A stretch of 64,000 nucleotides of DNA from Hydrolagus colliei (taxonomy: Eukaryota): NCBI GenBank assembly GCA_035084275.1, contig CM068771.1:4154001-4218000 (forward strand), given 5' to 3'. Of this stretch, positions 6,001 to 62,116 are shown in pieces. The notes below the pieces were generated by a model that was given only the letters and a program-made list of their open reading frames with translations, was not told the DNA's origin and ran no database searches. The first letter of the stretch is position 1. Each line of letters opens with the position of its first letter. The position numbers were made by a program, and so were the translations under genes.

Positions 6001-6615
6001 GTGTTTGACACAAAGGCTTCTCTCCCGATGCTGAAGATCATCTTATTTACAATTGTCAATGTGTCCGACATTAATGGTCTGGTTCTCACTCTAGTTACAG
6101 TCACTCTGGATCCTGACACAGCCCATCCCTGGCTCATCCTGTCTGAGGCCCTGACCAGTGTGAGACGCGGAGACACATGGCAGCCGCTCCCTGACACCCC
6201 AAAGAGGTTTAGTGTCTGTCACATTGTCCTGGGGTCTGAGGGCTTCACATCAGGGAGACATTACTGGGAGGTGCAGGTGGGGAACAAGACACAGTGCATT
6301 GTGGGATTGGCCAGAGAGTCTGTCAACAGGAAACAACCAATCACATGGTCACCAGAGGGCGGGGTCTGGGGGGTGGAGCTGGTGGGCGGGGCCTATGAGG
6401 CTCTGACGTCACCCCCCACCCCCCTGCCCCTGACAGTGAGACCCGGGAAGGTCGGAGTTCACCTGGACTATGAGGGGGGACAGGTGTCAGTTTACGACGC
6501 TGATCACATGTCTCATCTCCACACCTTCACCCAAACTTTCACTGGGAAACTCTATCCTCTCTTCTATGTCTGGTATGGTTCCGAGCCTCTGACAATCTGC
6601 CCAGTGACTGGTTAA
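35..6615 (+). CDS. Butyrophilin-like gene, copy A (signal-peptide exon lies upstream of the window)
   Basis: Exons with AG/GT boundaries and all phase-1 introns: IgV 35-382 (348 bp), IgC 587-862, TM 2271-2390 ([33 protein letters not shown]), 3142-3159 (DLEKTV), 4003-4029 (GWKRICRCA), B30.2/PRYSPRY 6095-6615 ([12 protein letters not shown]...GRHYWEV...LDYEGG...LTICP). Confidence 0.92.
915..1222 (-). mobile_element. Older copy of the same SINE in a BTNL intron (also 23138-23445 and 47233-47540)
   Basis: Degenerate head, core and tail on the minus strand. Confidence 0.7.
4297..4690 (-). mobile_element. L2-type LINE 3' end in a BTNL intron (also ~26520-26914 and ~50614-51008)
   Basis: [23 protein letters not shown]...IGGRAFS...FKASLKTLL with a (ttg)n tail. 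Similar fragments at ~1500-1740 and ~3340-3700. Confidence 0.75.
4700..5960. repeat. C/A-rich low-complexity minisatellite tract in the last BTNL intron (also ~26925-28140 and ~51020-51855)
   Basis: Almost no G on the + strand; ~26-bp sub-repeats such as ccctcacatcccacccctcacacaca in copy-specific numbers. Confidence 0.9.
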
Positions 6616-7460
6616 CGAGGAGGAAAACGCTGAGACATTGACTAGGTTCACAGGTTGGTGGAGTGGGGCTGGGATGGGGGGGGAGGGGGTTGAGTGGCCA
6701 CTTTAAGATGAGAGTTGGCTTTGGGTCAGTATCAATGGGGGGGGGGGGGGGCTTGTCCATCGCCTTGGCAACCAATCGATGACAACATGGGAGAGTGGCA
6801 AGAGGGCTCCATGTGTTGCGGTTGCTGGGAGGACTAACTGAGGTCCTCCTCATGGCTTTGCCCTCCCATCTCTCATTAAATGGTGAGGGGGGGGGGGGAG
6901 ATAGGGACTGAGCCCCCACCAGCCCTCACCACCCACCGTCTATTTGACTGTTGTAACCGCGAGGTTTGGATGGAGCCGAGTGTTTGATTCTGGGCTTTTC
7001 CCCCAGTTTTGAGCTGAGTCTGAGACAGGAATCAATTACAATGAAAACTTCATCACCAGCTGGTCTCTGGGCTTGTGCTGAGAGAATCTGAGCTTCCATC
7101 AGTGTGTGAGCTCACACGGTCTGAGACAGGGATATCGGCTGATATCTTCCTCTCCAGCAATGCCCAGTCTCACAGTCGGGGGCTGGGCTCAGAATCTCAC
7201 TGAAATCTCCCAAATCACTTTAGTGTCTATAAACAAGGTGACACATTCTACTCTAGCGTCAGCCTCGTCTCACTGTGTATAAACAATGTGTAATGTGTAT
7301 TTTCAGTGACTACTTTTATAATCTGTGTAACATTTCTCATTCACTGTAACAATCACTCAAGACCTTTAACCCTCATTAAATCAATGTCCCGTTGTCTAGT
7401 CAAGTTGATATTATTACAGAAAATATTGTCATTGATTTGCAAAATACAAGAGCAATTAAC

Positions 7461-18067: not shown

Positions 18068-18243
18068 NNNNNNNNNNNNNNNNNNNNNNNNNNNNNNNNN
18101 NNNNNNNNNNNNNNNNNNNNNNNNNNNNNNNNNNNNNNNNNNNNNNNNNNNNNNNNNNNNNNNNNNNNNNNNNNNNNNNNNNNNNNNNNNNNNNNNNNNN
18201 NNNNNNNNNNNNNNNNNNNNNNNNNNNNNNNNNNNNNNNNNNN
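18068..18243. other. Assembly gap (N run)
   Basis: 176 N. Confidence 1.
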
Positions 18244-18394: not shown

Positions 18395-18631
18395 NNNNNN
18401 NNNNNNNNNNNNNNNNNNNNNNNNNNNNNNNNNNNNNNNNNNNNNNNNNNNNNNNNNNNNNNNNNNNNNNNNNNNNNNNNNNNNNNNNNNNNNNNNNNNN
18501 NNNNNNNNNNNNNNNNNNNNNNNNNNNNNNNNNNNNNNNNNNNNNNNNNNNNNNNNNNNNNNNNNNNNNNNNNNNNNNNNNNNNNNNNNNNNNNNNNNNN
18601 NNNNNNNNNNNNNNNNNNNNNNNNNNNNNNN
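18395..18631. other. Assembly gap (N run)
   Basis: 237 N. Confidence 1.
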
Positions 18632-27000: not shown

Positions 27001-28796
27001 CCCACACACACACCCCCACAAACACCCTGGCATTCCCTCCCAACACACGCCCTCACATCTTCCCTCTGGCCCCCCCACCCCCCACCGCCGCACACATCCT
27101 CACTTCCCCTCACCTCCACACACCCTCATATCTCCCCCCACAACACACATAGTCACATCTCCCGCACACACCCTCAAACAACACTCCTCACACAAACCTC
27201 CACATAACCCACAAACACCCTTACAGCTCTCCCCCACACACCTGCAAATTGCTCAGCCAAACACACCCTCATATTCCCCCCACCAAACACACTCACACCC
27301 GAACCCTACACACCCTCAGTCACAACTCCCCCACCACACACATCCTTGCATTCCTCACCCACACATATACACATATCCCCCCATACACACCCTCATATCC
27401 CCTCCACACACATCAAACTCCACCCACTAAACCCTCACATAACCCTCACATCCCCACACACACAGCCTCACATTCCCCCTCACCCACATAACCTCACATC
27501 CCCCCAACACACACACCCTCACATCCCCCTACACACACAGCCTCACATCCCCATACACACAGCCTCACATCCCCCTCACCCATAAACCCTCACATCCCCC
27601 CTACACACACACACCCTCACACCCCCCCTACACACACACACCCTCACACCCCCCCTACACACACACACCCTCACATCCCCCCTACACACACACACCCTCA
27701 CATCCCCCCTACACACACACACCCTCACATCCCCCCTCCACACTGACACACCCCAGTCCACACACCCTCACATTCCCCCCTCCTCCCCCCCCCAACACAC
27801 ACCCTCACATTCCCCCCTCCTCCCCCCCCCAACACACACCCTCACATTCCCCCCTCCTCCCCCCCCCAACACACACCCTCACATCCCCCCCCAACACACA
27901 CCCTCACATCCCATCACACACTCACCCCCAACACAAACATTTCCCACCCCCACACATGCTCATAATCCCCTCCAGACTTACATCATCCCCACACACCCTC
28001 ACATCCCACCCCTCACACACACCCTCACATCCCACCCCTCACACACACCCTCACATCCCCCCTCTTCCTCTCCCCTCCACACACACCCCCACATCACCGC
28101 CCAACTCGTCCCCCTACCCCCCCCCCCCCACACCCACAGACTCTGAGCCTTTGTGTTGGATTCTGTTCCCAGGAGATGTCAGTGTTTGACACAAAGGCTT
28201 CTCTCCCGATGCTGAAGATCATCTTATTTACAATTGTCAATGTGTCCGACACTAATGGTCTGGTTCTCACTCTAGTTACAGTCACTCTGGATCCTGACAC
28301 AGCCCATCCCCGGCTCATCCTGTCTGAGGCCCTGACCAGTGTGAGACGCGGAGACACATGGCAGCCGCTCCCTGACACCCCAAAGAGGTTTAGTGTCTGT
28401 GCCATTGTCCTGGGGTCTGAGGGCTTCACATCAGGGAGACATTACTGGGAGGTGCAGGTGGGGAACAAGACAAGGTGGATTGTGGGATTGGCCAGAGAGT
28501 CTGTCAACAGGAAACAACCAATCACATGGTCACCAGAGGGCGGGGTCTGGGGTGTGTGGCTGTGGGGCGGGGCCTATGAGGCTCTGACGTCACCCCCCAC
28601 CCGCCTGCCCCTGACAGTGAGACCCGGGAAGGTCGGAGTTCACCTGGACTATGAGGGGGGACAGGTGTCAGTTTACGACGCTGATCACATGTCTCATCTC
28701 CACACCTTCACCCAAACTTTCACTGAGAGACTCTATCCTCTCTTCTATCCCGGGTTTGATTCTGAGCCTCTGACAATCTGCCCAGTGACTGGTTAA
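21042..28796 (+). CDS. Butyrophilin-like gene, copy B (complete, 455 aa)
   Basis: Exons 21042-21099 ([19 protein letters not shown], signal peptide), 22258-22605, 22810-23085, 24494-24613, 25365-25382, 26226-26252, 28276-28796. Total 1368 nt, one open frame ending in TAA. Confidence 0.92.
21197..21616 (+). mobile_element. L2-type LINE RT fragment in BTNL intron 1 (also 45292-45711)
   Basis: Degenerate LLDL....[11 protein letters not shown]...[12 protein letters not shown]...[13 protein letters not shown]. Confidence 0.75.
21711..22103 (-). mobile_element. CR1 LINE 3' end in BTNL intron 1 (also 45806-46198)
   Basis: [25 protein letters not shown]...[10 protein letters not shown]...FKTEIDRFL plus a CR1 3' UTR ending in ttcttatg. 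Confidence 0.85.
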
Positions 28797-42678: not shown

Positions 42679-42950
42679 NNNNNNNNNNNNNNNNNNNNNN
42701 NNNNNNNNNNNNNNNNNNNNNNNNNNNNNNNNNNNNNNNNNNNNNNNNNNNNNNNNNNNNNNNNNNNNNNNNNNNNNNNNNNNNNNNNNNNNNNNNNNNN
42801 NNNNNNNNNNNNNNNNNNNNNNNNNNNNNNNNNNNNNNNNNNNNNNNNNNNNNNNNNNNNNNNNNNNNNNNNNNNNNNNNNNNNNNNNNNNNNNNNNNNN
42901 NNNNNNNNNNNNNNNNNNNNNNNNNNNNNNNNNNNNNNNNNNNNNNNNNN
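42679..42950. other. Assembly gap (N run)
   Basis: 272 N. Confidence 1.
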
Positions 42951-45136: not shown

Positions 45137-48100
45137 ATGATCTGGAAACGCTGTATTCAGGTCCTGTGGCTTGTGCTCCCCCTCTCTCTGGCTGGTAAGG
45201 AAACACGTTGAATCTGTTTGGTTTCTGCTGATGGTAAAGGGAGGACCTCTCCATTCTGGTTCGTGTCCATAGGAAAGTGTAAAAGTTCCAAATGACATTT
45301 GTGTCTATTTGCGGCCAGGGCTCACTATGTCTCCTCATCCTTCTTGATCTTCCCACGGCCACTAACATGGTTGACCACTTTATCCTTCTCCACTCCCTTT
45401 CCTCTCAGCTCCACGTTCGTGGCTCTGTCCTTTCCTGGTTCTGTTCTTACCTTTCCCATCGTCTCCACTTTGTTTCCACCAATGACTTCTCCTGTATCCC
45501 ACGCTCCATCACATGTGATGATATCCAGGGTTCTTTACCTGGTCCTACCCTTTTTAATATTTACATTCTCTCGCTTCCGGATGTGGGTGACAATCAACTC
45601 TGTCTCTCTGCCTATACCCCCAACTCCAGGAACAATGCTGTCCTGATAGATTGTCGGTCAGACAAGGCTTGGATGAGACCCAATTTCCTAACTATAAATG
45701 TACAAGACTAAGGCTCTCCATCACCATCCTTTCCTTCCATCAGCATCTCTGCACCCCGGGCACTGACGGCATCAATATTCGTGGATGTACTCTCCACCAC
45801 CAATACATAAGAACTTAAGTATTAGGCGCAGGACTAGGCCATTTGGCCCCTCAAGCCTGCCCCGCCATTCAATAATACCATGGCTGATCTTCAAATCTAA
45901 CTCCACCTATGCGCCTCATTTCCATATCCCATAATCCCTTTGTCCAAAGAAATCTATCAATTTCAGTCTTGAATATGCTAAAGGATTGAACATCTACAGT
46001 TTTTTGGGTTAGAAAATTCCATAAATTCACTAGCCTCTGAGTGCAGAAGTTTTCCCTCAACTCATTGTGAAAAGGCTGACACCTATTCTTAAGACTATAA
46101 CCCCAACCAGGATCACCAACCAGGGGAAACAGTCTCCCACTGTCTACTCTGTCATGGCCCTTAATAATCTTATAGGTTTCTTTCATGTCACCTCTCATTC
46201 TTCAAATGCAAGGATTATTATTATAGTTCAATTGCGGCTGCCAAAGGGAACTTCTACTTTATGTTAGTATGTCACTAACTTTCTGTTGATAGTTATTCTG
46301 AGACAATGTGACTGAAAATCCTAACTATTGTCGATTGTTTGTTACTGAACAGAGAGATTCACAGTCAATGTTCCCAGTCACCCTGCCCTAGCCATTGCTG
46401 GTTCAGATGTTGTCCTGGACTGTAAGTGTTCCACAAAGCTGCCATTAGAGGGTGTGGAGGTGAGATGGTTCAGGGTGAGATTCGACTCCCCTGTGCACTT
46501 ATTTAAAGAGGGACATCATCAACTGGATATACAGGATGAAGCCTATAGACACAGAACACAACTGTTTGAAGAGAAGTTTATCAATGGTGATGTGTCTCTC
46601 AGACTGGAAGATGTACGGGTGACAGATCATGGAGAGTACACATGTTTCGTCGAGTACGACGGATCGTATGAACAGGGAGTGATAGAGTTGAAAGTTATAG
46701 GTCAGTAATGTTTCCAATTCATTTTATTACATGTAATCTGTGTGTGCAAGAATTCACTCATCTTTAATAAGTTCAAAGTACAATAATTTCTATGAACAAG
46801 AATGTCCGTTTATTCAGAATGTTGTAGATGTGTTTTTGTTAAGTTACTGCACTGTAATGTCCCGGGTAAAATATTGTCTGATTCATGTCTCCTGTCTCTT
46901 CCAGGCCTTGGCAGTCAGCCTTGGATTCATGTTGATGGACAACACAATGGTGGTGTGATGCTATTGTGTGAATCCAGTGGATGGTTCCCAGCACCAGAGG
47001 TTCTGTGGTTTGATGATCAGGGAAACAAATTATCAACACTCAGTAACTGGACAGTCAAACAGGATTCTAAAGGTCTCTTCAGTGTTCAAAGCCAAATAGA
47101 AATAATCCATTCAACCAACAAGATCAAGTGTCTGATTCATAATTCAGAAAATGAACAAGAAGGAAAACTCCAAATCTTGGGTTGGTAAACACAGTAAATA
47201 TTAATGTTGGTCTGAAAAATATGATGTAGATTTATTATAATAACTCTTGCATTTGAAATAACACTTTTCACGTTTTCTATGCATCTCAAATTGCTTCACA
47301 GAATATACTGTAAAATATATTGGCTGTGTATACATGGGCGAAACGTGGCAGAAAGTTGCGCACAGCAGTGTCCCTCAAACAGCTGTGTATTAAAATAACC
47401 AATTATTATTGTGTCTTTTTGAGGGACTATTATTAGCTGTGCAGAGTAAGGAAACTTGCCCAAAGTTTCACCCCACCGGGAATCAAACTCACGTCTCGCG
47501 CTTGTCAGGGGAGTGCTCTAATCACTGAGCTACAGGACTCCATAAAGTATTGTACAGGACTTCACTTGATGTGTTGTACAACACATGAAGTGAATACATA
47601 TCGGTCTGGATGATACGGTCTATCTAATTTCATCCTTTCAAAATATGAAACTCGTAAGAATTAGGAGCAGGAGTAGGCCACTCGGTCGCTCGAGCCTGCC
47701 CCACCATTCAATAAGATCATGGCTGATCTATTCTAACTCCATCTACCCGCGTTATCCCCATATCCATTCATCATCTCCTTTATCTCTCTATTATCCCTCT
47801 CATCATCTTTAATAACAACTATTTACATTTGTAAATTGCCTTTCACATCGAGACAACGTCCCAATGTGGAAGATGCTATAAAACGTCAAAGATTTGGTCA
47901 TCAGCTGGGGGATAGGGTCAAGAAGGATGGAAGGCAGGTGGGTGGGAGTAGGTGGGTGACCGAATGTATGGTCAAAGTGGTGGGTGTTGAAGGTGAGAAG
48001 GGACAGCCCGAGGTGGAGGGACTGTGGATGGGGTTCCAAAAATACCTCCGTACTCCAGCCCACCCAACCTTCCTGTTAATTATTCAAGCTGCTTATTATG

Positions 48101-51100
48101 TTAGGAATGAATCAATACTGAATGTCAACGTGACTGAAGCTCTCCTGATTAGCTCCAGTCAGCGCCTTCACATCTCAGGTACTGGCAGCATCAACAACAA
48201 CAACAAATTACATTTATAGAGCGCCTTTCACGTCGGGAGGACGTCCCAAGGCGCTGAATGTACAACCTCCATGGTTGTACATTCCATATCAACAAACCAG
48301 TCAGGAACCTAGATGTCTTGTTCTATCCTCAACTGTCTTTCCTCCCCCACTTACAAGCCGTGACTCATTCTGCCTTCAATCACCTCCGCAACATTGCCCA
48401 ACTCCGCCACTAGGTCACCCCTCAGGCCGCTGAAACTGTATCCAATATGATACCAGGCTTCACTTTGATTGAAGCCTGTGGTAGCGACTGAGCTATTGTG
48501 TGTAATACAGTAACATGGGGGTAAATGTAGGCATTTAGTGTTTGATATCAGAATAGATGTTTGAATGTATATTTACATTTCTTGACAGATGAGTTCTTCC
48601 CCAAAGTGCCAGTGGGTTTGGTGGTCTCCTCACTGCTCTTAGGACTTGCCATAATAGTGCTGAGTGTTCTTGTCGTCTACAGTGTAAAACAGCACCGAGA
48701 GATCAAAGGTACGTTTCCGTCAGTAACATCCCTCAACTTAACACTGTGTTACTGTTTGTGTGAGAATATGCAAGTTCTATAAATCAATTGCTTTCTCCCT
48801 TCACTCAGTAACCACCTGGCCTGTTTCATGTCACTGCCCTATTCTTCCCCCCCATCAGCAAGTTAGGCTTTCAACCTATCTGTCCCCACTCTCTGGAACT
48901 CAATCCAACTGTCTTTTCGAATCAGTCTTTCCAAATCACTGCCACATCATCCCATTCTGAAAGATGCTCTATAAATGTCATTTTGTTGTTGTTGTTTAAT
49001 AGGCCCCCTCTCCCCACTCTCACTGACTCACTGGAGACAATAAAACAGCATCTTAGACTACCACAGCTTGGCTAAATTATTAATTATTGCAGTATTATCT
49101 CATCGCTCGCTCCTCTCTCCCTTCTCTCGTTGAACGCTCCACTCCACTCTTCTCTTATCACTCGCTCCACTCTCCCTTCTCCGCCTAAGGGTGCATCGCG
49201 CGAGGGCGGTGAACTCCCATATGCAGACCAGCCAGCCAGCGCATATACGCACGTTATTCAATAAAGTCACGCATTTTTTTCTTCGCGCATGTTTGAGTTC
49301 ACAATTGAGAAAGATGCGATCGACGAGTGCCTACTGTAACTGAGTTGAGCTTTATTCTGTGTAGTTTATCGCTTGTTATTGTTGTAAACAGGTAGTTTGA
49401 CCACTAAATAATACTGTATTCAATATTGGTTTCTAACAGTTTTGCTTTGTATCCTCCAGATCTTGAGAAGACAGTTGGTAAGTCATCAAAGTAAAATAAC
49501 AATCTCATATTATGATTACTCTCACTCACAAGGTTCACACAAATCAGACGTAAGGTGGTGTTACAACACTTCTGTTTGCCAACAAAAGGCAAAGTTGCTA
49601 CACTCTCCTGTCAACCTGGGGAAATGCTCATGGGGAGCCAAATCAAATTCAAGGATTATTATTGTGGTATAAGGTTAACTTGCAATTCTTTAGCGCTCTC
49701 CACGCAGGGTAGCATCTCAAAGCACTTAAGAATGGCGGAGCCTGACTGTGGTCTGGGGGGGAGGTTGGGCCGTAAGCATGTAGGAAAAGGAATGTTTTAA
49801 GGCAGGTCTTAAGGGGAGATGGGGAGAAAGGCAGAGGGATTGAAGGAGAGAATCCATTGTTTCGGGGGTCGGTCGCTGAATGTATAAAGGTGGAGAGGAG
49901 GGAAAGTTCGCTGGGAAGTTGACATGTATATGAGATACATGATAAGAGACTTGAAGGAGTATATGGATAGGGCAGAACAGCTGCTGTAAGAAAAGATTGC
50001 TTTAATAACTCTTGCAAACTAGATATTTCACATCATTAACTGTTCATTTTCTTCGCTTAGACAACAGTGGCTTGTCAATATACACACATTTCAGGGAGGG
50101 GGTGGGGTGGATAGAATGAGCAAGCTTGTCAGTAACACAGGGAGTGAGTCAATGATGGAGGGATGGAGGAAATGAAAGAAGAAGGTATTGAGAGAGAACA
50201 ACAACAATATTGCACTTATATAGCGCTTTTCACGTCGGGAGGACGTCCCAAAGCGTCTCCCAAAACAAGGGAGTGATTTTGGAGCTACATAAGGTTTGAT
50301 CACTTCTCTCTTGGTTCTAGGGTGGAAGAGGATTTGTAGGTGTGCAGGTAAGAGTCTAACTGCTAAAGGAACCTGACTCCCCCCCAACGACCCCGCCACA
50401 CACTCACATTCCCTCCCCACCCCCCACCCACCCCCCACACACATGGACTCAATCCCACCCACACACATACTCCCGATGAGGGTGGTGTGGGGGTATGTGA
50501 TGGTATCTCACACACCATCACATACCCCCACACCACTCACACACACTCACATCTCTCTCCCACACACACCATCAAATCCCCCCGACACACACATCACCTC
50601 ACACCACACCCCCCACACAACAACAAATATTACATTGATAGAGCGCCTTTCACATTGGGAAGATGTCCCAAGGCGCTGAACAGTCGGGTCAGGACCCGAG
50701 CAAGGGGGAGGGGCAAGGTGGGTGGGGGGAGGGGAGGGAGAGAGTTGGGAGGGCAGCTGAAGGCACTGACCAAGAGGAGAGTCTTGAGACTGGCCTTGAA
50801 GGAGGTGAAGGGGAAGTGAGGTGAAGGGACTATGGGATGGAGTTTCAGAGTGTGGGGGCAGAGGCTGAAAGCCCGGCCACCAATGGGAGGGCAGATCAAG
50901 CGGAGAACATGGAGCAGCCTGCAGCCTGGGGTGGGCAGGTTGATAGGATGTCAGCCGGTCAGAGAGATAGGAGGGGGCAAGGTAGTGAAACGTCTTGAAA
51001 GTGAGGACAACCCCAAACACCCCCTCCCCACAATGCACATAACCTCACAAGCCTCCAACACAACTCTCCCTCCTCCCCCCGCCCCCCCCCCCCCCACACA

Positions 51101-52510
51101 CACACACCCACAAACACCCTGGCATTCCCTCCCAACACACGCCCTCACATCTTCCCTCTGGCCCCCCCACCCCCCACCGCCGCACACATCCTCACTTCCC
51201 CTCACCTCCACACACCCTCATGTCTCCCCCCACAACACACATAGTCACATCTCCCGCACACACCCTCAAACAACACTCCTCACACAAACCTCCACATAAC
51301 CCACAAACACCCTTACAGCTCTCCCCCACACACCTGCAAATTGCTCAGCCAAACACACCCTCATATTCCCCCCACCAAACACACTCACACCCGAACCCTA
51401 CACACCCTCAGTCACAACTCCCCCACCACACACATCCTTGCATTCCTCACCCACACATATCCCCCCATACACACCCTCATATCGCCTCCACACACGTCAA
51501 ACTCCACCCACTAAACCCTCACATAACCCTCACATCCCCCTCCACAAACACACCCTCATATTCCCCCTCCACACTGACACACCCCAGTCCACACACATTC
51601 CCCCCTCCTCCTCCCCCCCAACACACACCCTCACATCCCATCACACACTCATCCCCAACACACACATTTCCCACCCCCACACATGCTCATAATCCCCTCC
51701 AGACTTATATCATCCCCACACACCCTCACATCCCACCCCTCACACACACCCTCACATCCCACCCCTCACACACATGCACATCACCCCCTCTTCCTCTCCC
51801 CTCCACACACCCCCCCACATCACCCCCCCCCCCCCCCCCCCCCACACCCACAGACTCTGAGCCTATGTGTTGGATTCTGTTCCCAGGAGATGTCAGTGTT
51901 TGACACAAAGGCTTCTCTCCCGAAGCTGAAGATCATCTTATTGATAATTGTCAATGTGTCCGACATTAATGGTCTGGTTCTCACTCTAGTTACAGTCACT
52001 CTGGATCCTGACACAGCCCATCCCCGGCTCATCCTGTCTGAGGACCTGACCAGTGTGAGAGATGGAGACACATGGCAGCCGCTCCCTGACACCCCAAAGA
52101 GGTTTAGTAAAGATCCCATTGTCCTGGGGTCTGAGGGCTTCACATCAGGGAGACATTACTGGGAGGTGCAGGTGGGGAACAAGACACAGTGCATTGTGGG
52201 ATTGGCCAGAGAGTCTGTCAACAGGAAACAATGGATCACATGGTCACCAGAGGGCGGGGTCTGGGGGGTGGAGCTGTGGGGCGGGGCCTATGAGGCTCTG
52301 ACGTCACCCCGCACCCCCCTGCCCCTGACAGTGAGACCCGGGAAGGTCGGAGTTCACCTGGACTATGAGGGGGGACAGGTGTCAGTTTACGACGCTGATC
52401 ACATGTCTCATCTCCACACCTTCACCCAAACTTTCACTGAGAGACTCTATCCTCTCTTCTATCCCGGGTTTGATTCTGAGCCTCTGACAATCTGCCCAGT
52501 GACTGGTTAA
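45137..52510 (+). CDS. Butyrophilin-like gene, copy C (complete, 455 aa)
   Basis: Exons 45137-45194, 46353-46700, 46905-47180, 48589-48708, 49460-49477, 50321-50347, 51990-52510, with the same splice sites as copy B. Confidence 0.92.
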
Positions 52511-53522
52511 TCAGGAGGAAAACGCTGAGACATTGACTAGGTTCACAGGTTGGTGGAGTGGGGCTGGGGTGGGGGGGGGAGGGGGTTGAGTGGCCACTTT
52601 AAGATGAGAGTTGGCTTTGGGTCAGTATCAATGGGGGGGGGGGGGGGGCTTGTCCATCGCCTTGGCAACCAACCGCTGACAGGGTGTGAGAGCGGCAAGA
52701 GGGCCCCATGTGTTGCGGTTGCTGGGAGGACTGACTGAGGTCCTCCTCATGGCTTTCCCTCCCATCTCTCATTAAATGGTGAGGGGGCGGGGGGGAGATA
52801 GGGACTGAGCCCCCACCAGCCCTCACCACCCACCGTCTATTTGACTGTTGTAACCGCGAGGTTTGGATGGAGCCGAGTGTTTGATTCTGGGCTTTTCCCC
52901 CAGTTTTGAGCTGAGTCTGAGACAGGAATCAATTACAATGAAAACTTCATCACCAGCTGGTCTCTGGGCTTGTGCTGAGAGAATCTGAGCTTCCATCAGT
53001 GTGTGAGCTCACACGGTCTGAGACAGGGATATCGGCTGATATCTTCCTCTCCAGCAATGCCCAGTCTCACAGTCGGGGGCTGGGCTCAGAATCTCACTGA
53101 AATCTCCCAAATCACTTTAGTGTCTATAAACAAGGTGACACATTCTACTCTAGCGTCAGCCTCGTCTCACTGTGTATAAACAATGTGTAATGTGTATTTT
53201 CAGTGACTACTTTTATAATCTGTGTAACATTTCTCATTCACTGTAACAATCACTCAAGACCTTTAACCCTCATTAAATCAATGTCCCGTTGTCTAGTCAA
53301 GTTGATATTATTACAGAAAATATTGTCATTGATTTGCAAAATACAAGAGCAATTAACAATAAATCATGTTATGTCATTATTTTATGCCCAATGATTATAC
53401 ACACTCTACACACTCTCCTCGCCCTCCCCCTCCCTCTCCCACCCCCACCACCCCGAAACACTCAGACACTGATACACACACCACTGACCATCAACCCCTG
53501 ATACAAGAACACAAACAAGTTA

Positions 53523-54046
53523 CAGGTAGACCCCACTTAACGTCGCCTCGGTTAACGTACTTTCGTTATTACATTGCTGATACATTGGAAACACACAAAT
53601 ATCCCTCCCCGACCGTGGAGGATACGTTCCTGAATCCCCCGCCCCCCCCCCCCAAGTGATTAGTAAAACCATGGTTGGCAAATACAAGGCCAACCGCGTG
53701 TCTGGTTGATGTAACTGGGTCATCGCACCAAACTCTAGTGTTAGTGTTGAAACCCATGGATGCGCAAAATTCACTGCCGCGGTTGGCAAAGGTTGTCGCA
53801 GAGAGGAAACCACGGATACGGAGTGGGCAGCGAGAGAGATCGTCAGTGAGTGAGTGAGCCAGGAAGGCAGTCAGGGAGTGAGTGTAATGGGTTTGTTTTT
53901 GGAAATTTTTGACGAAAAATGTCCAAAAGAACCTAAATCCAGTTTTAACATTCATTCTTATGGGAAACATGTAATCACTTAACGTTGTTTCGCTTAAAGT
54001 CGCACTTTTCAAGAACCAAACTACGATGTTAAGCGGGGTCTACCTG
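53523..54046. mobile_element. Tc1/mariner-Tigger-type MITE, complete (524 bp)
   Basis: 23-bp TIRs CAGGTAGACCCCACTTAACGTCG / CAGGTAGACCCCGCTTAACATCG (21/23 match), flanked by TA on both sides (53521-53522, 54047-54048). Confidence 0.85.
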
Positions 54047-55478
54047 TACATTTTCACAGCATCTTTCATGTCAGGAGGACGTCCCTAGGCGCTGACAATC
54101 AGGGATCCCCACCTGATCTGGTGTTTGGGATCAGGAGGGGTGGAGGACAGGGAGGGGAGGGTAAGAGGTTTACCAATGGCACGGTTGAATAGGGGGGTCT
54201 TCAGATGCGGCTTGAAGGAAGCAATGGAGGGCGTGAGGTGGAGAGACTGAGGGTGCGTGCAGAGAGGTTGATAGTTCACCTGCCAATGAGAGGGCGGAGC
54301 AGTTGATCGAGTTGTTATTACTGTATCATTGTCTTCAAGCTACTTGTGCACTTCTTATGAAGCTTTGCCTGATTTTCTGCTGTTTCCCACCCTTTTCCCC
54401 AAAAATGTCAGTTCACATTACAAACCGTTTGATTTGTATTTCTAACTAACCCCAGCACTTTCCGGAAGTTTATTTGATGTTTTAAGCTTTTTTCCAGCAC
54501 TTTCTAGAAGTTGATCACCAGTAGGCACCTTCACGTGAACGTTTGGCTAATTTCCATCTGCACTTCCATCTTGAAACATCCGTTGATTTGTATAAATTTC
54601 ACACATGTTCACATTGAAATAATAATAACTTCACATTAACTTACGTTCAACGTCAAGGTGTTTTGAACAATTTTAATGAAGATTTGGCTGATTTCCAGCT
54701 GTGTCTTAAAACGTTCCCAAAATTTCAACAAATATTCAGAACAATTTGATCTGAATTTCCAGTTTATTAGAGCACTTTCCAGGAGTTTCAGCGAATTTTC
54801 AGCTGTTTTTCCAGCACTTTCTAGAAGTTACAGTAGTCATCAGTAGTGCCCAGCCCACTTTCATGTGAACTTTTGGCTCATTTCCAGCTGCATATTTTTT
54901 AAATATGTGTTGATTTCCATCAATTTAGCACATTTCAATTCACTTTACAGTATATTCTGTGAAGCGCTTTGTTACGTCGATAAGACATGAAAAAGCGCTG
55001 TATCAAATGCAAGGATTATTATTATTATTTTTATATTAAACTTACATTCGACTTCAAGATGTTTGTTACCCATTTATATTACCCATTTCTGACACATAAT
55101 GAATATCTGTCTGATTTCCGAAAGTGTCTTAACACTTTCTTCAAGTTTCAACAAAAGTTCCAAGCAATTTCCCTCTTTTCCCCCCTTTCTCCCTTGACCC
55201 CACTTCCGTGACTGTTTATCGGACGCTGCCGTGCGCAGTTTGGCTGCCACGTTTCGCCCACAAATATAGTCAATTCTCCTCTCCTTCATCCTACCCCAAC
55301 CCCTCCCCCCCTTCTCTTGTCCCTACCTGACTGTACAGCGCCTTGGGATGTCCTCTCAATGTGAAAGGCGCCACGTAAATGTAAGTTTTGATTGATAGAT
55401 TGATTGTTTGTTTGATTGATTGATTGATTGATTGATGGATCAATCAATCAATCGAATGAATGAATGAATGTCCAATGG

Positions 55479-56619
55479 TTTCCAGAACTTTCTAGAAGCT
55501 TTAACACATTTTCAGCTGTTTTTCCAGCACTTTCTAGAAGTTACAGTAGTCACCAGTAGTGCCCAGCCCACTTTCACGTGAACTTTTGGCTCATTTCCAG
55601 CTGTACATTCTTGAAATATCTGCTGATTTCCATTAATTTAGCACATTTCAATTCACTTTACAGTACATTCTGTGAAGCGCTTTGTGACGTCGATAAGACG
55701 TGAAAAAGCACCAGATCAAATGCGAGGATTATTATTATTATTTTCATATTAAGATAATAATTACAACTTCACGCAAACTTACATTCAACTTCAAGATGTT
55801 TTTGACACATTTACACATTTACATTGCACATAATGAATCTCTGGCTGATTTCCCAAAGTGTCTTAACTCTTTCCCCAGTTTCAGCAAAAGTTCCAAGCAA
55901 TTGTATCTGAACGCCCGATGGTTTCCAGAACTCTCCGGAAGCTTTCGCACACATCCAGCACTTTCCAGAAGCTACTGGCCGCGCCTGGTAATTTCGCATG
56001 AACCTCTGGCACGTGGCCAGCTGATCGTTCTGGAAGTTTAACCCGATTCCCGTTGATCCCGGACGTCTCCGCACAATCACAACAACAACAATAATAATAA
56101 TTCCACACGAATTCGCGGTTGATTCCGGCTGTTTTTCCCGCTAATTTTCAGCAGATTGCCAGCAGTTTGGAGGCATTGTTTTTTTACTGAAGTTTGGGGC
56201 AGATTTTCAGGTGTTTGAGCCCCTTTTCCCTGTTGACCCCCACAGGTCTGAGCCCCTCCCCCAGGTCTGAGCCCCTCCCCCAGGTCTGAGCCCCTCCCCC
56301 AGATCTGAGCCCCTCCCCCAGGTCTGAGCCCCTCCCCCAGGTCTGAGCCCCTCCCCCAGATCTGAGCCCCTCCCCCAGGTCAGATCTCCCAGAGCTGGGA
56401 ATGAAGTTCCTCTGATTTCCAGCTGTTTCTGGACTGGGTTCCTTCCTGAAGTCTCCACAACGTTCCACGCGCTCCGATTGGCCGCCGACCAGGAAGCGGC
56501 CGGGGGCGTCCTCTTTGTGACATCACCTTGACGCCCTCTGATTGGCCCCCCTCCACCCCCCCCCCCCCCCCCCGAGGCCGCCAGGCCCCGCCCACAACCA
56601 AGAAACCAGCCTTTATATA
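55479..56619 (+). promoter_or_regulatory. HSP70 copy 3 promoter (HSEs, CCAAT, GC box, TATA)
   Basis: Same elements; TATATA at 56614-56619. Confidence 0.88.
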
Positions 56620-57096
56620 CAGGGCGAGGAGTGAAGCCAGGCTCAGACACTGAGACAGACTGAGAGTCAGACTGACACTGAGACAGACTGACACTGAGAC
56701 AGACTAACACTGAGACAGGCTGACACTGAGACAGACTGACACTGAGACAGACTGACACTGAGACAGACTGACACTGAGACAGACTGACACTGAGACAGAC
56801 TGACACTGAGACAGACTGACACTGAGACAGACTGACACTGAGACAGACTGAGAGTCAGACTGACACTGAGACAGACTGACACTGAGAGGGGCTGAGAGAC
56901 TGAAAGCCTGAGAAACAAGAAGGGAGAGCGAGAGAAAGAAGAGAGAGAGCGAAGGACGGAGCTACAAGAAGAAGACATAAAGAGGAAAACACCTTCGCGG
57001 CGACTTCAGTCCAAGACTCACTGACATTGGGACAGCGATTCGGAGCCAAAGGATCTAAGTCACGTACAGACGCGCTCACGTACAGACGGCAGGACA

Positions 57097-58950
57097 ATGG
57101 CCCCAGCGATTGGCATCGACCTGGGCACCACCTACTCGTGTGTGGGTGTGTTCCAGCACGGCAAGGTGGAGATCATCGCCAACGACCAGGGCAACCGCAC
57201 CACACCCAGCTACGTGGCCTTCAACGACACCGAGAGGCTGATCGGCGAAGCCGCCAAGAACCAAGCAGCCCTCAACCCCCCCAACACCGTCTTCGATGCC
57301 AAGAGGCTGATCGGGAGGAAGTTCGATGACCCTGTGGTGCAGGCGGACATGAAGCACTGGCCTTTCCAGGTGGTGAGCCAGGGGGGCAAGCCCAAGGTGC
57401 AGGTTGAGTACAAGGGAGAGTCCAAGACGTTCAACCCCGAAGAGATCTCGTCCATGGTTCTGACCAAGATGAAGGAGATCGCCGAGGCTTATCTGGGCTC
57501 CAGAGTCACCAACGCTGTCATCACGGTGCCCGCTTACTTCAACGACTCCCAGCGCCAGGCCACCAAAGACGCCGGGATGATCGCGGGGCTCAACGTCCTT
57601 CGCATCATTAATGAACCCACGGCAGCCGCCATCGCCTACGGTCTGGACAAGAAGGGCCAGGGGGAGAAGAACGTCCTGATCTTTGACCTGGGTGGAGGCA
57701 CCTTCGACGTGTCCATCCTCGCCATCGACGGCGGGATCTTTGAGGTCAAATCCACAGCCGGTGACACCCACCTGGGGGGCGAGGACTTTGACAGCCGTAT
57801 GGTCGACCACTTCATCCAGGAGTTCAAGAGGAAAAACAAGAGGGACATCAGCCAGAACAAGAGAGCAGTCAGGAGGCTGAGGACAGCCTGCGAGAGAGCA
57901 AAGAGGACTCTGTCTTCAAGCACCCAAGCCAGCATTGAGATCGACTCACTGTTTGAGGGAATTGACTTCTACACCTCCATCACCAGGGCACGGTTTGAGG
58001 AGCTCAATGGAGACCTGTTCAGAGGAACCCTGGAGCCAGTGGAGAAAGCGTTGACAGACGCCAAGCTGGACAAGTCTCAGATCCACGAAGTTGTCCTCGT
58101 CGGTGGCTCCACTCGCATCCCGAAGATCCAGAAGCTTCTACAGGATTTCTTCAACGGCCGAGAGCTGAACAAGAGCATCAACCCGGATGAGGCAGTGGCC
58201 TACGGGGCAGCTGTGCAAGCCGCCATCTTGATGGGCGACAAGTCTGAGAATGTGCAGGATCTGCTCCTGCTGGACGTGACTCCTCTGTCCCTGGGTCTGG
58301 AGACAGCGGGAGGCGTCATGACCTCCCTCATCAAGAGAAACTCAACCATACCCTCCAAACAGACCCAGGTCTTCACCACCTACTCCGACAACCAGTCCGG
58401 TGTCTTGGTGCAAGTCTACGAGGGCGAGAGAGCCATGACCAAGGACAACAACCTCCTGGGCAAGTTTGAGCTGAGTGGAATCCCCCCGGCTCCCCGCGGG
58501 GTCCCGCAGATCCAGGTTACCTTCGACATCGATGCCAACGGCATCCTTAGTGTCTCGGCCGCTGACAAGAGCACTGGTAATGAGAACAAGATCACCATCA
58601 CCAACGAGAAGGGCCGGCTGAGCAAGGAGGAGATCGAGAGGATGGTGCAGGAGGCTGAGAGGTACAAGGCGGATGATGAGACGCAGCGGGAGAGGGTGAT
58701 GGCCAAGAACAAGCTGGAGTCATTCGTCTACACAGCCAAATGTGCGATGGAGGACAAGAGCATGGAGGGCAAGGTGGGAGAGGAGGACAGGCGGCAGGTG
58801 CTGGACAAGTGCAAACAGGTCATCAACTGGCTGGATGGAAACCAGACAGCGGAGAAGGAAGAGTTTGAGCACCAGCTGAAGGAGCTGGAGAGGGTGTGCA
58901 GTCCTGTCATGGCCAGGCTGAGGCAGGGAGGGGCAGAGGGCGGTCAGTGA
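57097..58950 (+). CDS. hsp70: Intronless HSP70, copy 3, truncated at 617 aa (no EEVD)
   Basis: Same CGA>TGA (58948-58950); the old tail is intact to TAA at 59001. Confidence 0.93.
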
Positions 58951-59323
58951 TCAGGCAAGAGCTGCCCATCTACCGGCCCAACCGTGGAGGAAGTCGATTA
59001 AACGTCAGCCGATGGACTTCCTGCCCCTTTGGCTTTTCTGTACCTGCTCAGGTGTTAACCTTTCCCACCTTCAGACACTTTGGGATATATGTATAAATGA
59101 TAAACGTATAGGGCTATGGGTTAAGAGTAAGGGTGTGGGACTGATTGGGTAGATCTTTCAAACAGCCAGCGCAGATACAATGGGCCTAATGGTCTACTTA
59201 TTTGCGGTAAGATTGAATGATTCTATGTATATTTTGAACTAATGATCTGCTATGAATGTATGTCACAGCGACAGCAGCTGGACTCCGAATTTTATTTTAT
59301 TAAACTGTTTGTACCCGATGTAC

Positions 59324-59354
<31 letters not shown>

Positions 59355-60335
59355 AGATTCATACTGGCTCAAACACTGGGGCCCTCAACTCTGAGTCAGA
59401 AGGTTGTGGGTGGAAGCCACACACTGGGCCGTGGAACCACAGTCTACCATGACACTTGAATGCAGGCGCTGGGTGGGGAGGGGGGCGTTGGGTGGGGGAG
59501 GGGGAGGGTGGAGTGTGGGGTTTGCGACATCGTCAGAACTGGCATCCTTCAAACGAAACATTAAAGTGAGCTCCCGTCAGCGCAGTGTTTCACAAACAGT
59601 TGTGGATTTCGTGAGCAAATGTTATTATTGTTAAGGGATTGTGACCCCAGTAAAGTGATCGGAAATCGCCCTAGAACTGTGGTCCTTTTCCCTGCTGGAT
59701 AAACAGAGGCTTGTGGAATGGCGGTGTTGATGGGGAAACTTCACCCTATTGTTCACAGTAAAACATTAATAATAATCCTGACGTTTGAGAAGCACCTTTC
59801 GTGTCAGGTGGACATCTCAAAGAGGTTACACCATAAACATAAGAGCTGAGAACTTCTAGGACATGGTTATACAGTAAAATTCACATCAGTATTATTGCTA
59901 ACATCACACCTGGACCCGAGTAAATTTACCTTTCCCTCGTGTCTCCCGATGTAGGTAAGTTAGAGTGCGATATCAGAAACAGAATCATTTACTGAGGGTT
60001 AAATTGACCGGCTGGGTGGATACAATGGACGCCGGTTAAATCGGACACGAAAGGGCCGAGCATTTAATCTGAAATAAGCAGCTTCTGAGGCTGACCGCTA
60101 TCGATGTATTAAATCTCATCCTTTGTTTTAACCCAATTACTGACAACATAGTAACGCCAATTACTACAACATATAGCGCCTCTGACGTCAGGAGGAAGTC
60201 CCGAGGCACTGTCACCAATTGCTGATGTGTAAAGCCCTGAACACAATGCTCACTGTCATTTACAAACTAAGAAGGTGATTGATACCTTGATAAATAGTGT
60301 TCACAGAAAACGGGTAAAAAAAAAGTGACAGAAAT

Positions 60336-61865: not shown

Positions 61866-61985
61866 TATGGCTTCTTATGTGTTGAGAGGATGACACAAGT
61901 TTAACAATAGAAAATAATACTTCCGATGTCTCAAATGGCTTCACAGGTCTTTTTTTTTGGGGGGGGTGGGGTGGGGGGGCGGGAA

Positions 61986-62116
61986 GGGAGGAAATGTCTG
62001 GTTCATTTCCGTCCGCCGGGAAATGTCCGGGAAGTGTCTGGTTCCTTCCCGAAGCGGTCGATGTCCCGCCCCCTTTCCCCCCCTCCCGCTGGCTGCTGAT
62101 TGGCCGCCCCCAGGGA
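61986..62116 (-). promoter_or_regulatory. Promoter of TIGD copy 3
   Basis: Same motifs as copy 1. Confidence 0.55.

What the first reader, a model, noticed from the sequence alone, without database searches (positions are those of the whole stretch)
51990..52510. B30.2 exon of copy C is a patchwork of copy A-like, copy B-like and private segments
Seen along the exon: B-like (R13), private (D, D, KDP), A-like (CAG TGC), private (TGG), A-like (GGG GTG GAG) directly followed by B-like (TGG), private R, A-like P, then B-like (ER, PGFD, TCT). The two silent sites also switch partner. No single tree fits these sites. Inference: short-tract gene conversion is shuffling individual loops among paralogues, generating combinatorial pocket variants.
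Basis: partly seen in the sequence, partly recalled or inferred. Interest (0 to 1): 0.72.

Follow-up and report, generated by a model that had tools for sequence, protein, structure and literature searches.

The report
Hypervariable pocket exon in tandem butyrophilin-like genes
Three almost identical tandem copies of a butyrophilin-like immune gene in a chimaera-like fish differ almost only at ligand-pocket codons of their last exon; gene conversion plus selection for diversity probably caused this, as already proposed for other fish immune gene families.

Summary
But with three sequences each site is a singleton, so "no single tree fits" cannot follow. The order of A-, B- and C-private events along the exon is random (p=0.77).

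The real anomaly is a divergence island. The 22-24 kb units differ at 0-3 sites/kb over most of the gene, and the IgV, IgC and TM exons are identical bar one base. Copies A and B differ at 38/kb in the B30.2 exon and 54/kb in its first 290 bp of 3' flank. The changes are whole-codon swaps at positions that are hypervariable in 70 Callorhinchus B30.2 domains. They align with BTN3A1 pocket residues W350, H351, W391 and R418.

Polarising with Callorhinchus sequences reveals true incongruence: derived A18 groups A+B, C67 groups A+C, R151 groups B+C.

Most parsimonious reading: B and A each carry one private replaced tract of about 200-300 bp, probably imported from B30.2 exons outside the window. 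C then only looks like a patchwork. Gene conversion is supported; loop-by-loop shuffling among A, B and C is not shown. The mechanism was already proposed for zebrafish NLR-B30.2 and finTRIM genes. Assembly phasing is untested.

The parts
51990..52510 (+). B30.2 (PRY/SPRY) exon of butyrophilin-like gene copy C. It is the last coding exon, running from an AG acceptor to the TAA stop, and encodes 172 aa.
   Evidence: Pfam PRY 1.8e-24 and SPRY 3.5e-21. PDB BTN2A2/BTN3A1/TRIM21 hits at E 1e-44 to 2e-47. AlphaFold2 model pLDDT 92.7, with TM 0.93-0.95 to TRIM21 and BTN3A1 B30.2 structures.
28276..28796 (+). B30.2 exon of copy B.
   Evidence: blastn 95.97% identity to C, no gaps; intact ORF.
6095..6615 (+). 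B30.2 exon of copy A.
   Evidence: blastn 95.20% identity to C, no gaps; intact ORF.
51484..52740 (.). Divergence island in copy C coordinates: about 500 bp of intron, the exon, and about 230 bp of 3' flank. It is followed by 600 bp (52801-53400) with no differences among the three copies.
   Evidence: Three-way alignment of the units, per-region counts.
28401..28603 (+). Private tract of copy B (C coordinates 52115-52317; codons 42-109). It carries GCC42, AGG66, TGG67, silent GGT92, TGG94 and CGC109. W67, W94 and R109 are the commonest states in the family. Proposed to be imported from a donor outside the window.
   Evidence: Four of the 27 B-private events in the unit fall in these 203 bp (binomial p=4e-4, window chosen after seeing the data).
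6545..6836 (+). Private tract of copy A (C coordinates 52440-52733; codons 150-162 plus the 3'UTR). It carries G150, K151, V158, W159, Y160, G161 and silent TCC162, plus 9 non-coding changes, 8 of them within 33 bp. Proposed to be imported from a donor outside the window.
   Evidence: Five of the 51 A-private events fall in 254 bp (binomial p=1.4e-3, window chosen after seeing the data).
45137..45199 (+). Putative signal-peptide exon of copy C.
   Evidence: tblastn with Callorhinchus BTN1A1-like protein P0005, residues 1-21, 71% identity.
46349..46705 (+). IgV exon of copy C (approximate boundaries). One variable site among the three copies.
   Evidence: Pfam V-set 2e-11.
46900..47180 (+). IgC exon of copy C (approximate boundaries). 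Identical in all three copies.
   Evidence: Pfam C2-set_3 (butyrophilin Ig-C) 2.3e-24.
48582..48707 (+). Transmembrane/juxtamembrane exon of copy C. Identical in all three copies.
   Evidence: tblastn to P0005 residues 227-268, 86% identity.
51040..51850 (.). C-rich low-complexity, cryptically repeated tract directly upstream of the exon. Its length varies among the copies (indels of 90-263 bp). It may act as a boundary or hotspot for exchange.
   Evidence: Composition, self-blast, gap runs, tandem repeats of period 12-26.

Best explanation
What it is. The region is the single-exon B30.2 (PRY/SPRY) domain of the third of three tandem butyrophilin-like genes (signal peptide, IgV, IgC, TM, B30.2). 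Each gene lies in a 22-24 kb unit that also carries an intronless HSP70 gene and a pogo-type transposase ORF. The genome is closely related to, but not the same as, Callorhinchus milii.

The anomaly. The units have been duplicated or homogenised very recently (0-3 differences/kb over the 5' 4 kb; the ectodomain and TM exons are identical bar one base). The B30.2 exon and its immediate flanks form a narrow divergence island. There, the copies differ by whole-codon replacements at the family's hypervariable positions, which line the ligand pocket.

Proposed mechanism (inferred):
1. The exon belongs to a large pool of B30.2 exons with a conserved framework and hypervariable pocket codons.
2. Ectopic gene conversion from other pool members overwrites stretches of a few hundred bp in individual copies. 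Diversifying selection keeps converted copies that have new pocket combinations.
3. In this array the flanks give the backbone ((A,B),C).
4. B then received a tract covering codons 42-109, and A received a tract covering codons 150-162 plus the 3'UTR.
5. C differs from A+B across the 5' part of the exon and the upstream intron.
6. A few single-codon differences (codons 12 and 42) may be point mutations or micro-conversions.

Copy C therefore looks like a patchwork because A and B were each altered in different places.

Likely function (inferred by analogy with BTN3A1 and TRIM-type B30.2 domains): an intracellular ligand sensor attached to a constant surface ectodomain, with each copy recognising something different.
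For: Shown:
- Three gap-free copies with 33 variable bases in 21 codons, 19 of them replacements. Packing into codons, p<1e-5.
- Island. A-B differences are 38/kb in the exon and 54/kb in 52511-52800. They are 2.3/kb in 51484-51989, 0 in 52801-53400 and 2.7/kb in 53401-56281 (Fisher p about 1e-11).
- The IgV, IgC and TM exons have 1, 0 and 0 variable sites.
- Flank backbone: C-private:A-private:B-private sites are 16:0:1 upstream and 37:5:1 downstream.
- The window-variable positions are the hypervariable positions of 70 unique Callorhinchus B30.2 domains (mean entropy 1.75 against 0.61 bits, Mann-Whitney p=4e-5).
- The same states, and often the same codons, recur in Callorhinchus exons (AAA GAT CCC, GAT24, CGC24, GTG96, GAG94, TGG TAT).
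- Codons 40, 41, 81 and 107 align with BTN3A1 W350, H351, W391 and R418. Codons 42, 66-67 and 158 adjoin Y352, H378 and R469 (pocket residue list from PMC4337483; hypergeometric p=0.006).
- Incongruence after polarisation: D18 is present in 69/70, W67 in 70/70 and K151 in 70/70 Callorhinchus domains. Yet A18 is shared by A+B, C67 by A+C and R151 by B+C.
- My own PHI-type test on A, B, C plus the Callorhinchus exon gives p=0.001 at site level.
- Non-coding hitch-hiking: 9 A-private sites in the 3'UTR, and both silent exon changes lie within 6 bp of replaced codons with the same pattern.
- B-private and A-private events are concentrated in 52115-52597 and 52440-52740 (p=1e-4 and 1.4e-3).
- Generality: Callorhinchus paralogue pairs have 94-97% framework identity but only 30-65% identity at hypervariable positions, with 21-33 amino-acid differences against 3-5 silent codon differences. 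The adjacent Callorhinchus BTN-like genes in L001 and L003 are 95-97% identical in the 5' half and 67-80% identical around the B30.2 exon.
- The mechanism has been published for another B30.2 family (PMC4852459).
Against: - No donor exon is present in the window, so import from outside is inferred from parsimony only.
- With the three copies alone there is no statistical mosaic signal.
- The PHI p=0.001 treats bases within one codon as independent. At the level of codon events, by my own count, 9 informative events sorted into three blocks give about p=0.005.
- Among 11 Callorhinchus exons, 45% of informative site pairs are incompatible but show no dependence on distance (PHI p=0.20). Recurrent mutation at hypervariable sites explains that equally well.
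- Nei-Gojobori dN/dS for whole exons is only 1.4-2.4 and not significant. At hypervariable codons it is 1.6-3.1.
- Silent divergence in the exon is not significantly lower than in the non-coding part of the island (p=0.15).
- The B and A tracts were delimited after seeing the data.
- Phasing in a 98-99% identical tandem array cannot be checked here.
Confidence: 0.5

Rival explanations
1. Short, loop-sized conversion tracts move individual pocket loops among copies A, B and C themselves. Copy C, or each copy, is a recombinant of the others. The island is old diversity that selection protects from homogenising conversion (an island of divergence, as in the Teshima-Innan model).
For: - Three incompatible groupings lie in 5'-to-3' order within 500 bp.
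- Several differences are replacements of 2-3 bases in a single codon, flanked by tens of identical bases: codon 81 CCA/TGG, codon 96 GTG/TGG, and codon 42 hit separately in A and in B.
- The kb-scale mosaic of the whole unit shows that the copies do exchange sequence.
- The concept is published for zebrafish NLR-B30.2 genes.
Against: - An A-C exchange over codons 66-109 would have to skip codons 81, 96 and 107, which lie inside it and differ between A and C. That needs at least 3 extra events, against one contiguous import into B.
- Over 52440-52740, B and C differ at about the backbone level, by my count (4 sites in about 290 bp), while A alone carries 17 private sites. This points to a change in A rather than a recent B-C exchange.
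- Private multi-base states (KDP, W81, VWYG) cannot come from the other two copies.
- There is no mosaic signal from the three copies alone.
Confidence: 0.22
2. Assembly artefact. In a tandem array 98-99% identical, mis-polishing, haplotype mixing or partial collapse has switched phase between true copies or alleles. The combinations seen in A, B and C would then not exist on any one chromosome.
For: - The array is hard to assemble.
- N runs lie near the unit junctions (18068-18243, 18395-18631, 42679-42950).
- Phase switching would give exactly this kind of alternating pattern.
Against: - Private states exist in every copy, and differences are absent from 52801-53400 and from the other exons, so the copies are resolved.
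- Long coherent blocks at unit level (for example 15 of 16 consecutive events A-private across 58948-60335) look like real history.
- An independent Callorhinchus assembly shows the same conserved framework with variable pocket codons, and the same 5'-homogeneous, 3'-diverged gene pairs.
- None of this verifies the phasing within the exon.
Confidence: 0.1
3. No recombination. After a recent triplication, each copy independently accumulated point mutations at pocket codons under very strong positive selection (star tree).
For: - All sites are singletons among the three copies and their order is random.
- The changes sit at positions that are hypervariable across the family.
- Codon 42 was hit independently in A and in B.
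Against: - Nine codons carry 2-3 changed bases, while neighbouring neutral DNA of A and B differs at 0.2-0.3%.
- 14 non-coding differences within 290 bp of 3' flank cannot be driven by selection on the protein.
- Derived states at conserved positions (A18, C67, R151) conflict with any single tree.
Confidence: 0.06

Closest known systems
Zebrafish NLR-B30.2 (NLR-C) family (Howe et al. 2016, PMC4852459)
   Same: A single-exon B30.2 domain in a large clustered family. [quoted passage not shown] The authors explicitly propose that conversion tracts shorter than the exon recombine substitutions and spread recognition modules.
   Different: There the domain sits on a cytosolic NACHT-LRR protein. Here it is the cytoplasmic tail of a transmembrane IgV-IgC butyrophilin-like protein, in a three-copy array whose non-B30.2 parts are essentially identical. 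Here the island can be seen against near-identical flanks.
Teleost finTRIM and primate TRIM5alpha B30.2 domains (van der Aa et al. 2009, PMC2657112)
   Same: Hypervariable, positively selected sites lie in the variable loops of the B30.2 domain. A recombination breakpoint was detected within the exon by GARD.
   Different: Those are RING-B-box-coiled-coil proteins. That paper found no finTRIM counterpart in the elephant shark. Here the closest relatives are Callorhinchus BTN1A1-like and A33/NF7-like TRIM genes.
Human BTN3A1 (intracellular B30.2 phosphoantigen sensor)
   Same: Same domain architecture and fold (TM 0.93-0.94, rmsd 1.3-1.4 A, about 48% identity). The variable codons coincide with pocket residues W350, H351, W391 and R418.
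   Different: The basic pocket is not conserved. At the positions of H351, H378, K393, R412, R418 and R469 the window copies have C or D, I, T, E, P or R, and Y. Phosphoantigen binding is therefore not expected. From my own knowledge, not tested here: the BTN3 paralogues are reported to evolve in concert rather than diversify their pockets.
Microconversion and segmental exchange in MHC class I/II peptide-binding exons, and hybrid genes in the chicken BG (butyrophilin-like) region (PMC4046983)
   Same: Tandem immune genes in which recombination or conversion, together with selection for diversity, produces patchwork exons on homogenised backgrounds.
   Different: Different domains are involved: MHC grooves, and the BG IgV domain and coiled-coil tails, with no B30.2 domain in BG genes. 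These comparisons rest on my own knowledge and on the abstract listed; they were not analysed here.

Membership tests
B30.2 (PRY/SPRY) domain | PRY plus SPRY sequence signature and the beta-sandwich fold. | tested here: met
   Pfam PRY 85.5 bits and SPRY 76 bits, both above their cut-offs. PDB hits at E 2e-47. Model pLDDT 92.7, TM 0.95 to TRIM21 and 0.94 to BTN3A1.
Butyrophilin/BTN-like proteins | IgV + IgC (BTN-type C2-set) + transmembrane segment + cytoplasmic B30.2 encoded by one terminal exon. | tested here: met
   V-set 2e-11 and C2-set_3 2.3e-24. The exons are collinear with Callorhinchus BTN1A1-like P0005, including the signal and TM exons. The small cytoplasmic exons between TM and B30.2 were not located, and no transcript evidence is available.
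BTN3A1-type phosphoantigen sensors | Basic pocket formed by H351, H378, K393, R412, R418 and R469. | tested here: not met
   The aligned residues are C/D41, I68, T83, E101, P/R107 and Y157. Only copy C has the arginine at the R418 position.
Diversifying B30.2 multigene families (finTRIM, NLR-B30.2, TRIM5 type) | Clustered multi-copy genes whose variation is concentrated in the ligand-contact loops or pocket of the domain. | tested here: met
   Three tandem copies here, and dozens on one 4.1 Mb Callorhinchus contig. Entropy test p=4e-5. Pocket overlap p=0.006.
Diversifying B30.2 multigene families (finTRIM, NLR-B30.2, TRIM5 type) | Codon-level evidence of positive selection (dN/dS > 1 at those sites). 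| tested here: inconclusive
   Pairwise Nei-Gojobori ratio is 1.4-2.4 for the whole exon, not significant. At hypervariable codons it is 1.6-3.1, against 0.4-1.0 in the framework. No site-model likelihood test was run, and recombination would bias one.
Interlocus gene conversion | Phylogenetic incongruence between adjacent segments of the same paralogues. | tested here: met
   Derived A18 (A+B), C67 (A+C) and R151 (B+C) occur at positions that are 69/70, 70/70 and 70/70 conserved in Callorhinchus. PHI p=0.001 with one outgroup. The three copies alone give no signal.
Interlocus gene conversion | An identified donor and acceptor with a delimited tract. | tested here: not met
   No other B30.2 sequence is in the window (tblastn). 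The species is not in the protein collection. The tracts are delimited only by runs of private sites.

The most novel reading that the evidence does not exclude
Chimaera-like fishes may hold a germline 'cassette pool' of B30.2 exons shared between butyrophilin-like and neighbouring TRIM genes. In the butyrophilin-like arrays, a constant IgV-IgC ectodomain would be coupled to combinatorially varied intracellular pockets. The array would then work as a panel of inside-out sensors, each reporting a different cytosolic ligand to the same surface partner. That would be an ancient, diversified counterpart of BTN3A1 signalling.
Probability: 0.15. Interest if true: 0.75.

Novelty: new member of a known kind. 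Interest (0 to 1): 0.45.

Why it matters
The three copies are almost identical everywhere else, so this array isolates the diversifying process in a B30.2 pocket unusually cleanly. The affected codons, the hitch-hiking non-coding bases and the tract edges can all be read directly.

If the phasing is confirmed and donors are found, the array would give tract lengths and donor choice for conversion among B30.2 exons. It would also show that butyrophilin-like genes, and not only TRIM and NLR genes, diversify their intracellular sensor domain in an early-branching jawed vertebrate.

The idea itself (positive selection plus short-tract conversion in B30.2 exons) has already been published for zebrafish.

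Tried and rejected
- Runs test and 3SEQ-type tests on the three copies alone gave no signal once the bases of one codon are merged (p=0.77; 0.75-0.99). With flanks the result is only borderline (p about 0.04-0.05).
- Whole-exon Nei-Gojobori dN/dS was not significant.
- My PHI-type test on 11 Callorhinchus exons gave p=0.20 despite 45% incompatible site pairs. It cannot separate fine-scale shuffling from recurrent mutation.
- There are only 5 informative silent sites in Callorhinchus, too few to test for recombination free of selection.
- Variable residues are not enriched in loops relative to strands in the model (6 of 19 in strands, p=0.46). Mapping onto the pocket is the informative comparison.
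- Silent divergence in the exon against the non-coding part of the island gave p=0.15.
- A search for further B30.2 fragments in the window that could act as donors found none.
- An exact look-up of the HSP70 and transposase proteins, tried to place the species, found neither in the collection.
- Two contig look-ups (P0025, P0052) returned nothing.
- A mutational cause (hypermutable exon, tandem multi-base mutation) was considered and rejected. The multi-base changes are aligned to codons and sit at positions that vary across the family.
- Relaxed constraint was considered and rejected, because it cannot raise the substitution density 12-25-fold above neighbouring neutral DNA.

Full report
**What is at the coordinates.** Window 51990-52510 runs from an AG acceptor to a TAA stop and encodes 172 residues.
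- The residues match Pfam PRY and SPRY.
- They match solved B30.2 domains of BTN2A2, BTN3A1 and TRIM21 at E=1e-44 to 2e-47.
- An AlphaFold2 model (pLDDT 92.7) superposes on TRIM21 and BTN3A1 B30.2 structures with TM 0.93-0.95.
- Upstream on the same strand lie an IgV exon, a butyrophilin-type IgC exon and a transmembrane exon. All are collinear with a Callorhinchus milii 'butyrophilin subfamily 1 member A1-like' protein.

**The array.** The gene sits in a 22-24 kb unit present three times in the window (A from 1, B from 22224, C from 46319). Each unit also has an intronless HSP70 gene and a pogo-type transposase ORF.

**The species.**
- The closest proteins in the public collection are all from C. 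milii, at 70-82% identity. They are both BTN-like and TRIM (A33/NF7-like), and most lie on one 4.1 Mb contig.
- The window is not C. milii. Its introns are about 84% identical to the syntenic C. milii loci, whereas C. milii paralogues are 90-97% identical to each other.
- Four residues fixed in A, B and C are absent from all 70 distinct C. milii domains.
- I infer a related holocephalan.

**Check of the observation.** The exon occurs exactly three times without indels. There are 33 variable bases: 13 private to C, 12 where B=C, and 8 where A=C. They fall in 21 codons, of which 19 change the amino acid. Both silent sites have different partners.

With three sequences every variable site is a singleton and fits the only unrooted tree. 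When adjacent same-pattern bases are merged into 14 events, their order gives 11 runs (p=0.77), and 3SEQ-type tests give p=0.75-0.99.

**What is really unusual.**
- A three-way alignment of the units shows 0-3 differences per kb over the first 4 kb. The IgV, IgC and TM exons have 1, 0 and 0 variable sites.
- Flanking the B30.2 exon, almost all differences are private to C (16:0:1 upstream, 37:5:1 downstream). The local backbone is therefore ((A,B),C), and A and B differ at only 2-3 sites per kb there.
- Inside the exon, A and B differ at 38 sites per kb, and in the next 290 bp of non-coding 3' flank at 54 per kb. The following 600 bp have no difference at all (Fisher p about 1e-11).
- The 33 sites are packed into 21 codons (p<1e-5). 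Nine codons carry 2-3 changes: CGC/GAT, GTC TGT/AAA GAT, CCA/TGG and others.
- Both silent changes lie within 6 bp of replaced codons that have the same pattern.

**Where the changes fall in the protein.**
- Across 70 distinct C. milii B30.2 domains, the positions that vary in the window are the family's hypervariable positions (entropy 1.75 against 0.61 bits, p=4e-5). 13 of the 19 are in the top 30 of 172.
- The states, and often the exact codons, recur in C. milii exons fetched as DNA. Examples are AAA GAT CCC for KDP, GAT and CGC at codon 24, GTG96, GAG94, TGG TAT at 159-160, and even the silent GGG/GGT alternative at codon 92.
- Aligned to BTN3A1, codons 40, 41, 81 and 107 are W350, H351, W391 and R418 of the phosphoantigen pocket. 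Codons 42, 66-67 and 158 adjoin Y352, H378 and R469 (residue list from PMC4337483; overlap p=0.006).
- The basic residues of that pocket are not conserved, so these proteins are not phosphoantigen sensors.

**Is there a mosaic after all?** Yes, once the sites are polarised.
- D18, W67 and K151 are present in 69/70, 70/70 and 70/70 C. milii domains.
- The derived A18 is shared by A and B, C67 by A and C, and R151 by B and C.
- With one C. milii exon as a fourth sequence, the informative sites support AB|CO at codons 18-41, AC|BO at 67-109 and BC|AO at 151-161. That is all three splits, sorted 5' to 3' (PHI-type test p=0.001 at site level). At least two exchange events are needed.

**The most economical history.** It keeps the flank backbone ((A,B),C) and gives B one contiguous private tract (C coordinates 52115-52317). 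This tract restores the family-typical W67, W94 and R109 and brings in the silent GGT92. A gets one contiguous private tract (52440-52733). This tract restores K151, brings in G150, V158, W159, Y160, G161 and silent TCC162, and adds nine 3'UTR changes.

An A-C exchange over codons 66-109 would have to skip codons 81, 96 and 107, which lie inside it. In the 3' tract, B and C differ only at about the backbone level, while A alone carries 17 private sites. B-private and A-private events are concentrated in these stretches (p=1e-4 and 1.4e-3, windows chosen after seeing the data). On this reading, C looks 'A-like' where B was overwritten and 'B-like' where A was overwritten.

**Mechanism.**
- Shown: a narrow divergence island; codon-aligned multi-base replacements at pocket positions; non-coding bases changing together with them; incongruent derived states.
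- Inferred: ectopic gene conversion from other exons of a large B30.2 pool overwrites stretches of a few hundred bp, and diversifying selection retains new pocket combinations.
- Not demonstrated: donors from outside, because the window holds no other B30.2 sequence.
- The alternative is exchange among A, B and C, with the island protected from homogenisation. It needs more events but is not excluded.
- Point mutation alone is very unlikely, given the multi-base codons, the 3'UTR cluster and the conflicting derived states.
- An assembly phasing artefact cannot be tested here.

**Generality.**
- In C. milii, paralogue pairs with 94-97% framework identity share only 30-65% of hypervariable residues. 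They show 21-33 amino-acid differences against 3-5 silent codon differences.
- pN/pS is 1.6-3.1 at hypervariable codons and 0.4-1.0 in the framework.
- Two adjacent C. milii BTN-like genes are 95-97% identical in their 5' halves but 67-80% identical around the B30.2 exon.
- The same architecture of variation therefore exists in an independent assembly. That argues against a pure artefact and for a family-wide process.
- A formal test there (PHI p=0.20, although 45% of site pairs are incompatible) cannot separate fine-scale shuffling from recurrent mutation.

**Comparison with what is known.** Positive selection in B30.2 variable loops, with a recombination breakpoint inside the exon, was described for teleost finTRIMs (PMC2657112). 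The specific idea that conversion tracts shorter than the B30.2 exon recombine substitutions and spread recognition modules was proposed for zebrafish NLR-B30.2 genes (PMC4852459). This case is a new member of that kind. It is notable for its butyrophilin context and for the clean contrast with near-identical flanks. My two full-text searches on butyrophilin and B30.2 returned no report of this for butyrophilin-like genes of cartilaginous fishes.

**Verdict.** The listed sites are real. The stated logic is wrong, but the conclusion 'gene conversion' is probably right for other reasons. 'Loop-by-loop shuffling among A, B and C that makes copy C a mosaic' is not shown, and a simpler history fits better. 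Interest is moderate.

Noticed in passing
window 10564-12417, 32605-34458, 57097-58950: Three intronless HSP70 genes differ at only 7 bases, of which 6 are silent third positions. The seventh is the stop codon. Copies B and C have TGA where copy A has CGA, and copy A reads on for 17 codons to a canonical '...GPTVEEVD' end. B and C therefore share a premature stop that removes the EEVD motif. This fits the B=C block of the unit.
   Followed up: partly
window 13793-15319, 35839-37365, 60339-61865 (minus strand); L001:23729-25203: A 509-aa pogo/Tigger-type transposase ORF (DDE_1, HTH_Tnp_Tc5, CENP-B_N) is intact in all three units, at 98.8-100% protein identity. The copy at the syntenic position next to a Callorhinchus BTN-like gene has 5 stops. 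It may be an old insertion that is kept open in this lineage, or it may simply be young as part of the duplicated unit.
   Followed up: partly
window 46319-63270 (unit C coordinates): The whole unit is a kb-scale mosaic. A and B are closest over 51484-56281, B and C over 58701-61800 (15 of 16 consecutive events are A-private, p=5e-5), and A and C over 61801-63270. This is as expected from unequal crossing-over or long conversions between units.
   Followed up: partly
window 51040-51850 and 52556-52660 (and the same places in A and B): The hypervariable exon is bracketed by a C-rich, cryptically repeated tract upstream and by poly-G runs downstream. The upstream tract has repeat periods of 12-26 and length differences of 90-263 bp between copies. 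These tracts coincide with the edges of the divergence island and might bound or promote exchange.
   Followed up: no
window 18068-18243, 18395-18631, 42679-42950: Three N runs lie in the inter-gene parts near the ends of units A and B. They were left untouched. If they are assembly gaps, they add to the uncertainty over how well the array is resolved.
   Followed up: no
codons 18, 67 and 158 of the B30.2 exons (copy C coordinates 52043-52045, 52190-52192, 52463-52465): Some copies carry changes at residues that are nearly invariant in the family: D18A in A and B, W67C in A and C, and P158V in A. W67 is a core tryptophan, conserved in 70/70 Callorhinchus domains and in at least 90% of a wider alignment. 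Whether these copies still fold and function is unknown.
   Followed up: no
L001 and L003 (C. milii MU249860.1, 726825-792758): Two neighbouring Callorhinchus BTN-like genes are 95-97% identical over about 7 kb of their 5' parts. Identity drops to 67-80% just upstream of and around the B30.2 exon, while the exon itself stays more conserved than its flanks. This is an older, wider version of the island seen in the window.
   Followed up: partly
L004:7765-8250 (minus strand): A degraded B30.2-like fragment (48% identity, with a deletion in the PRY part) lies between two BTN-like genes in Callorhinchus. Pseudo-exons of this kind could act as silent donors for conversion.
   Followed up: no
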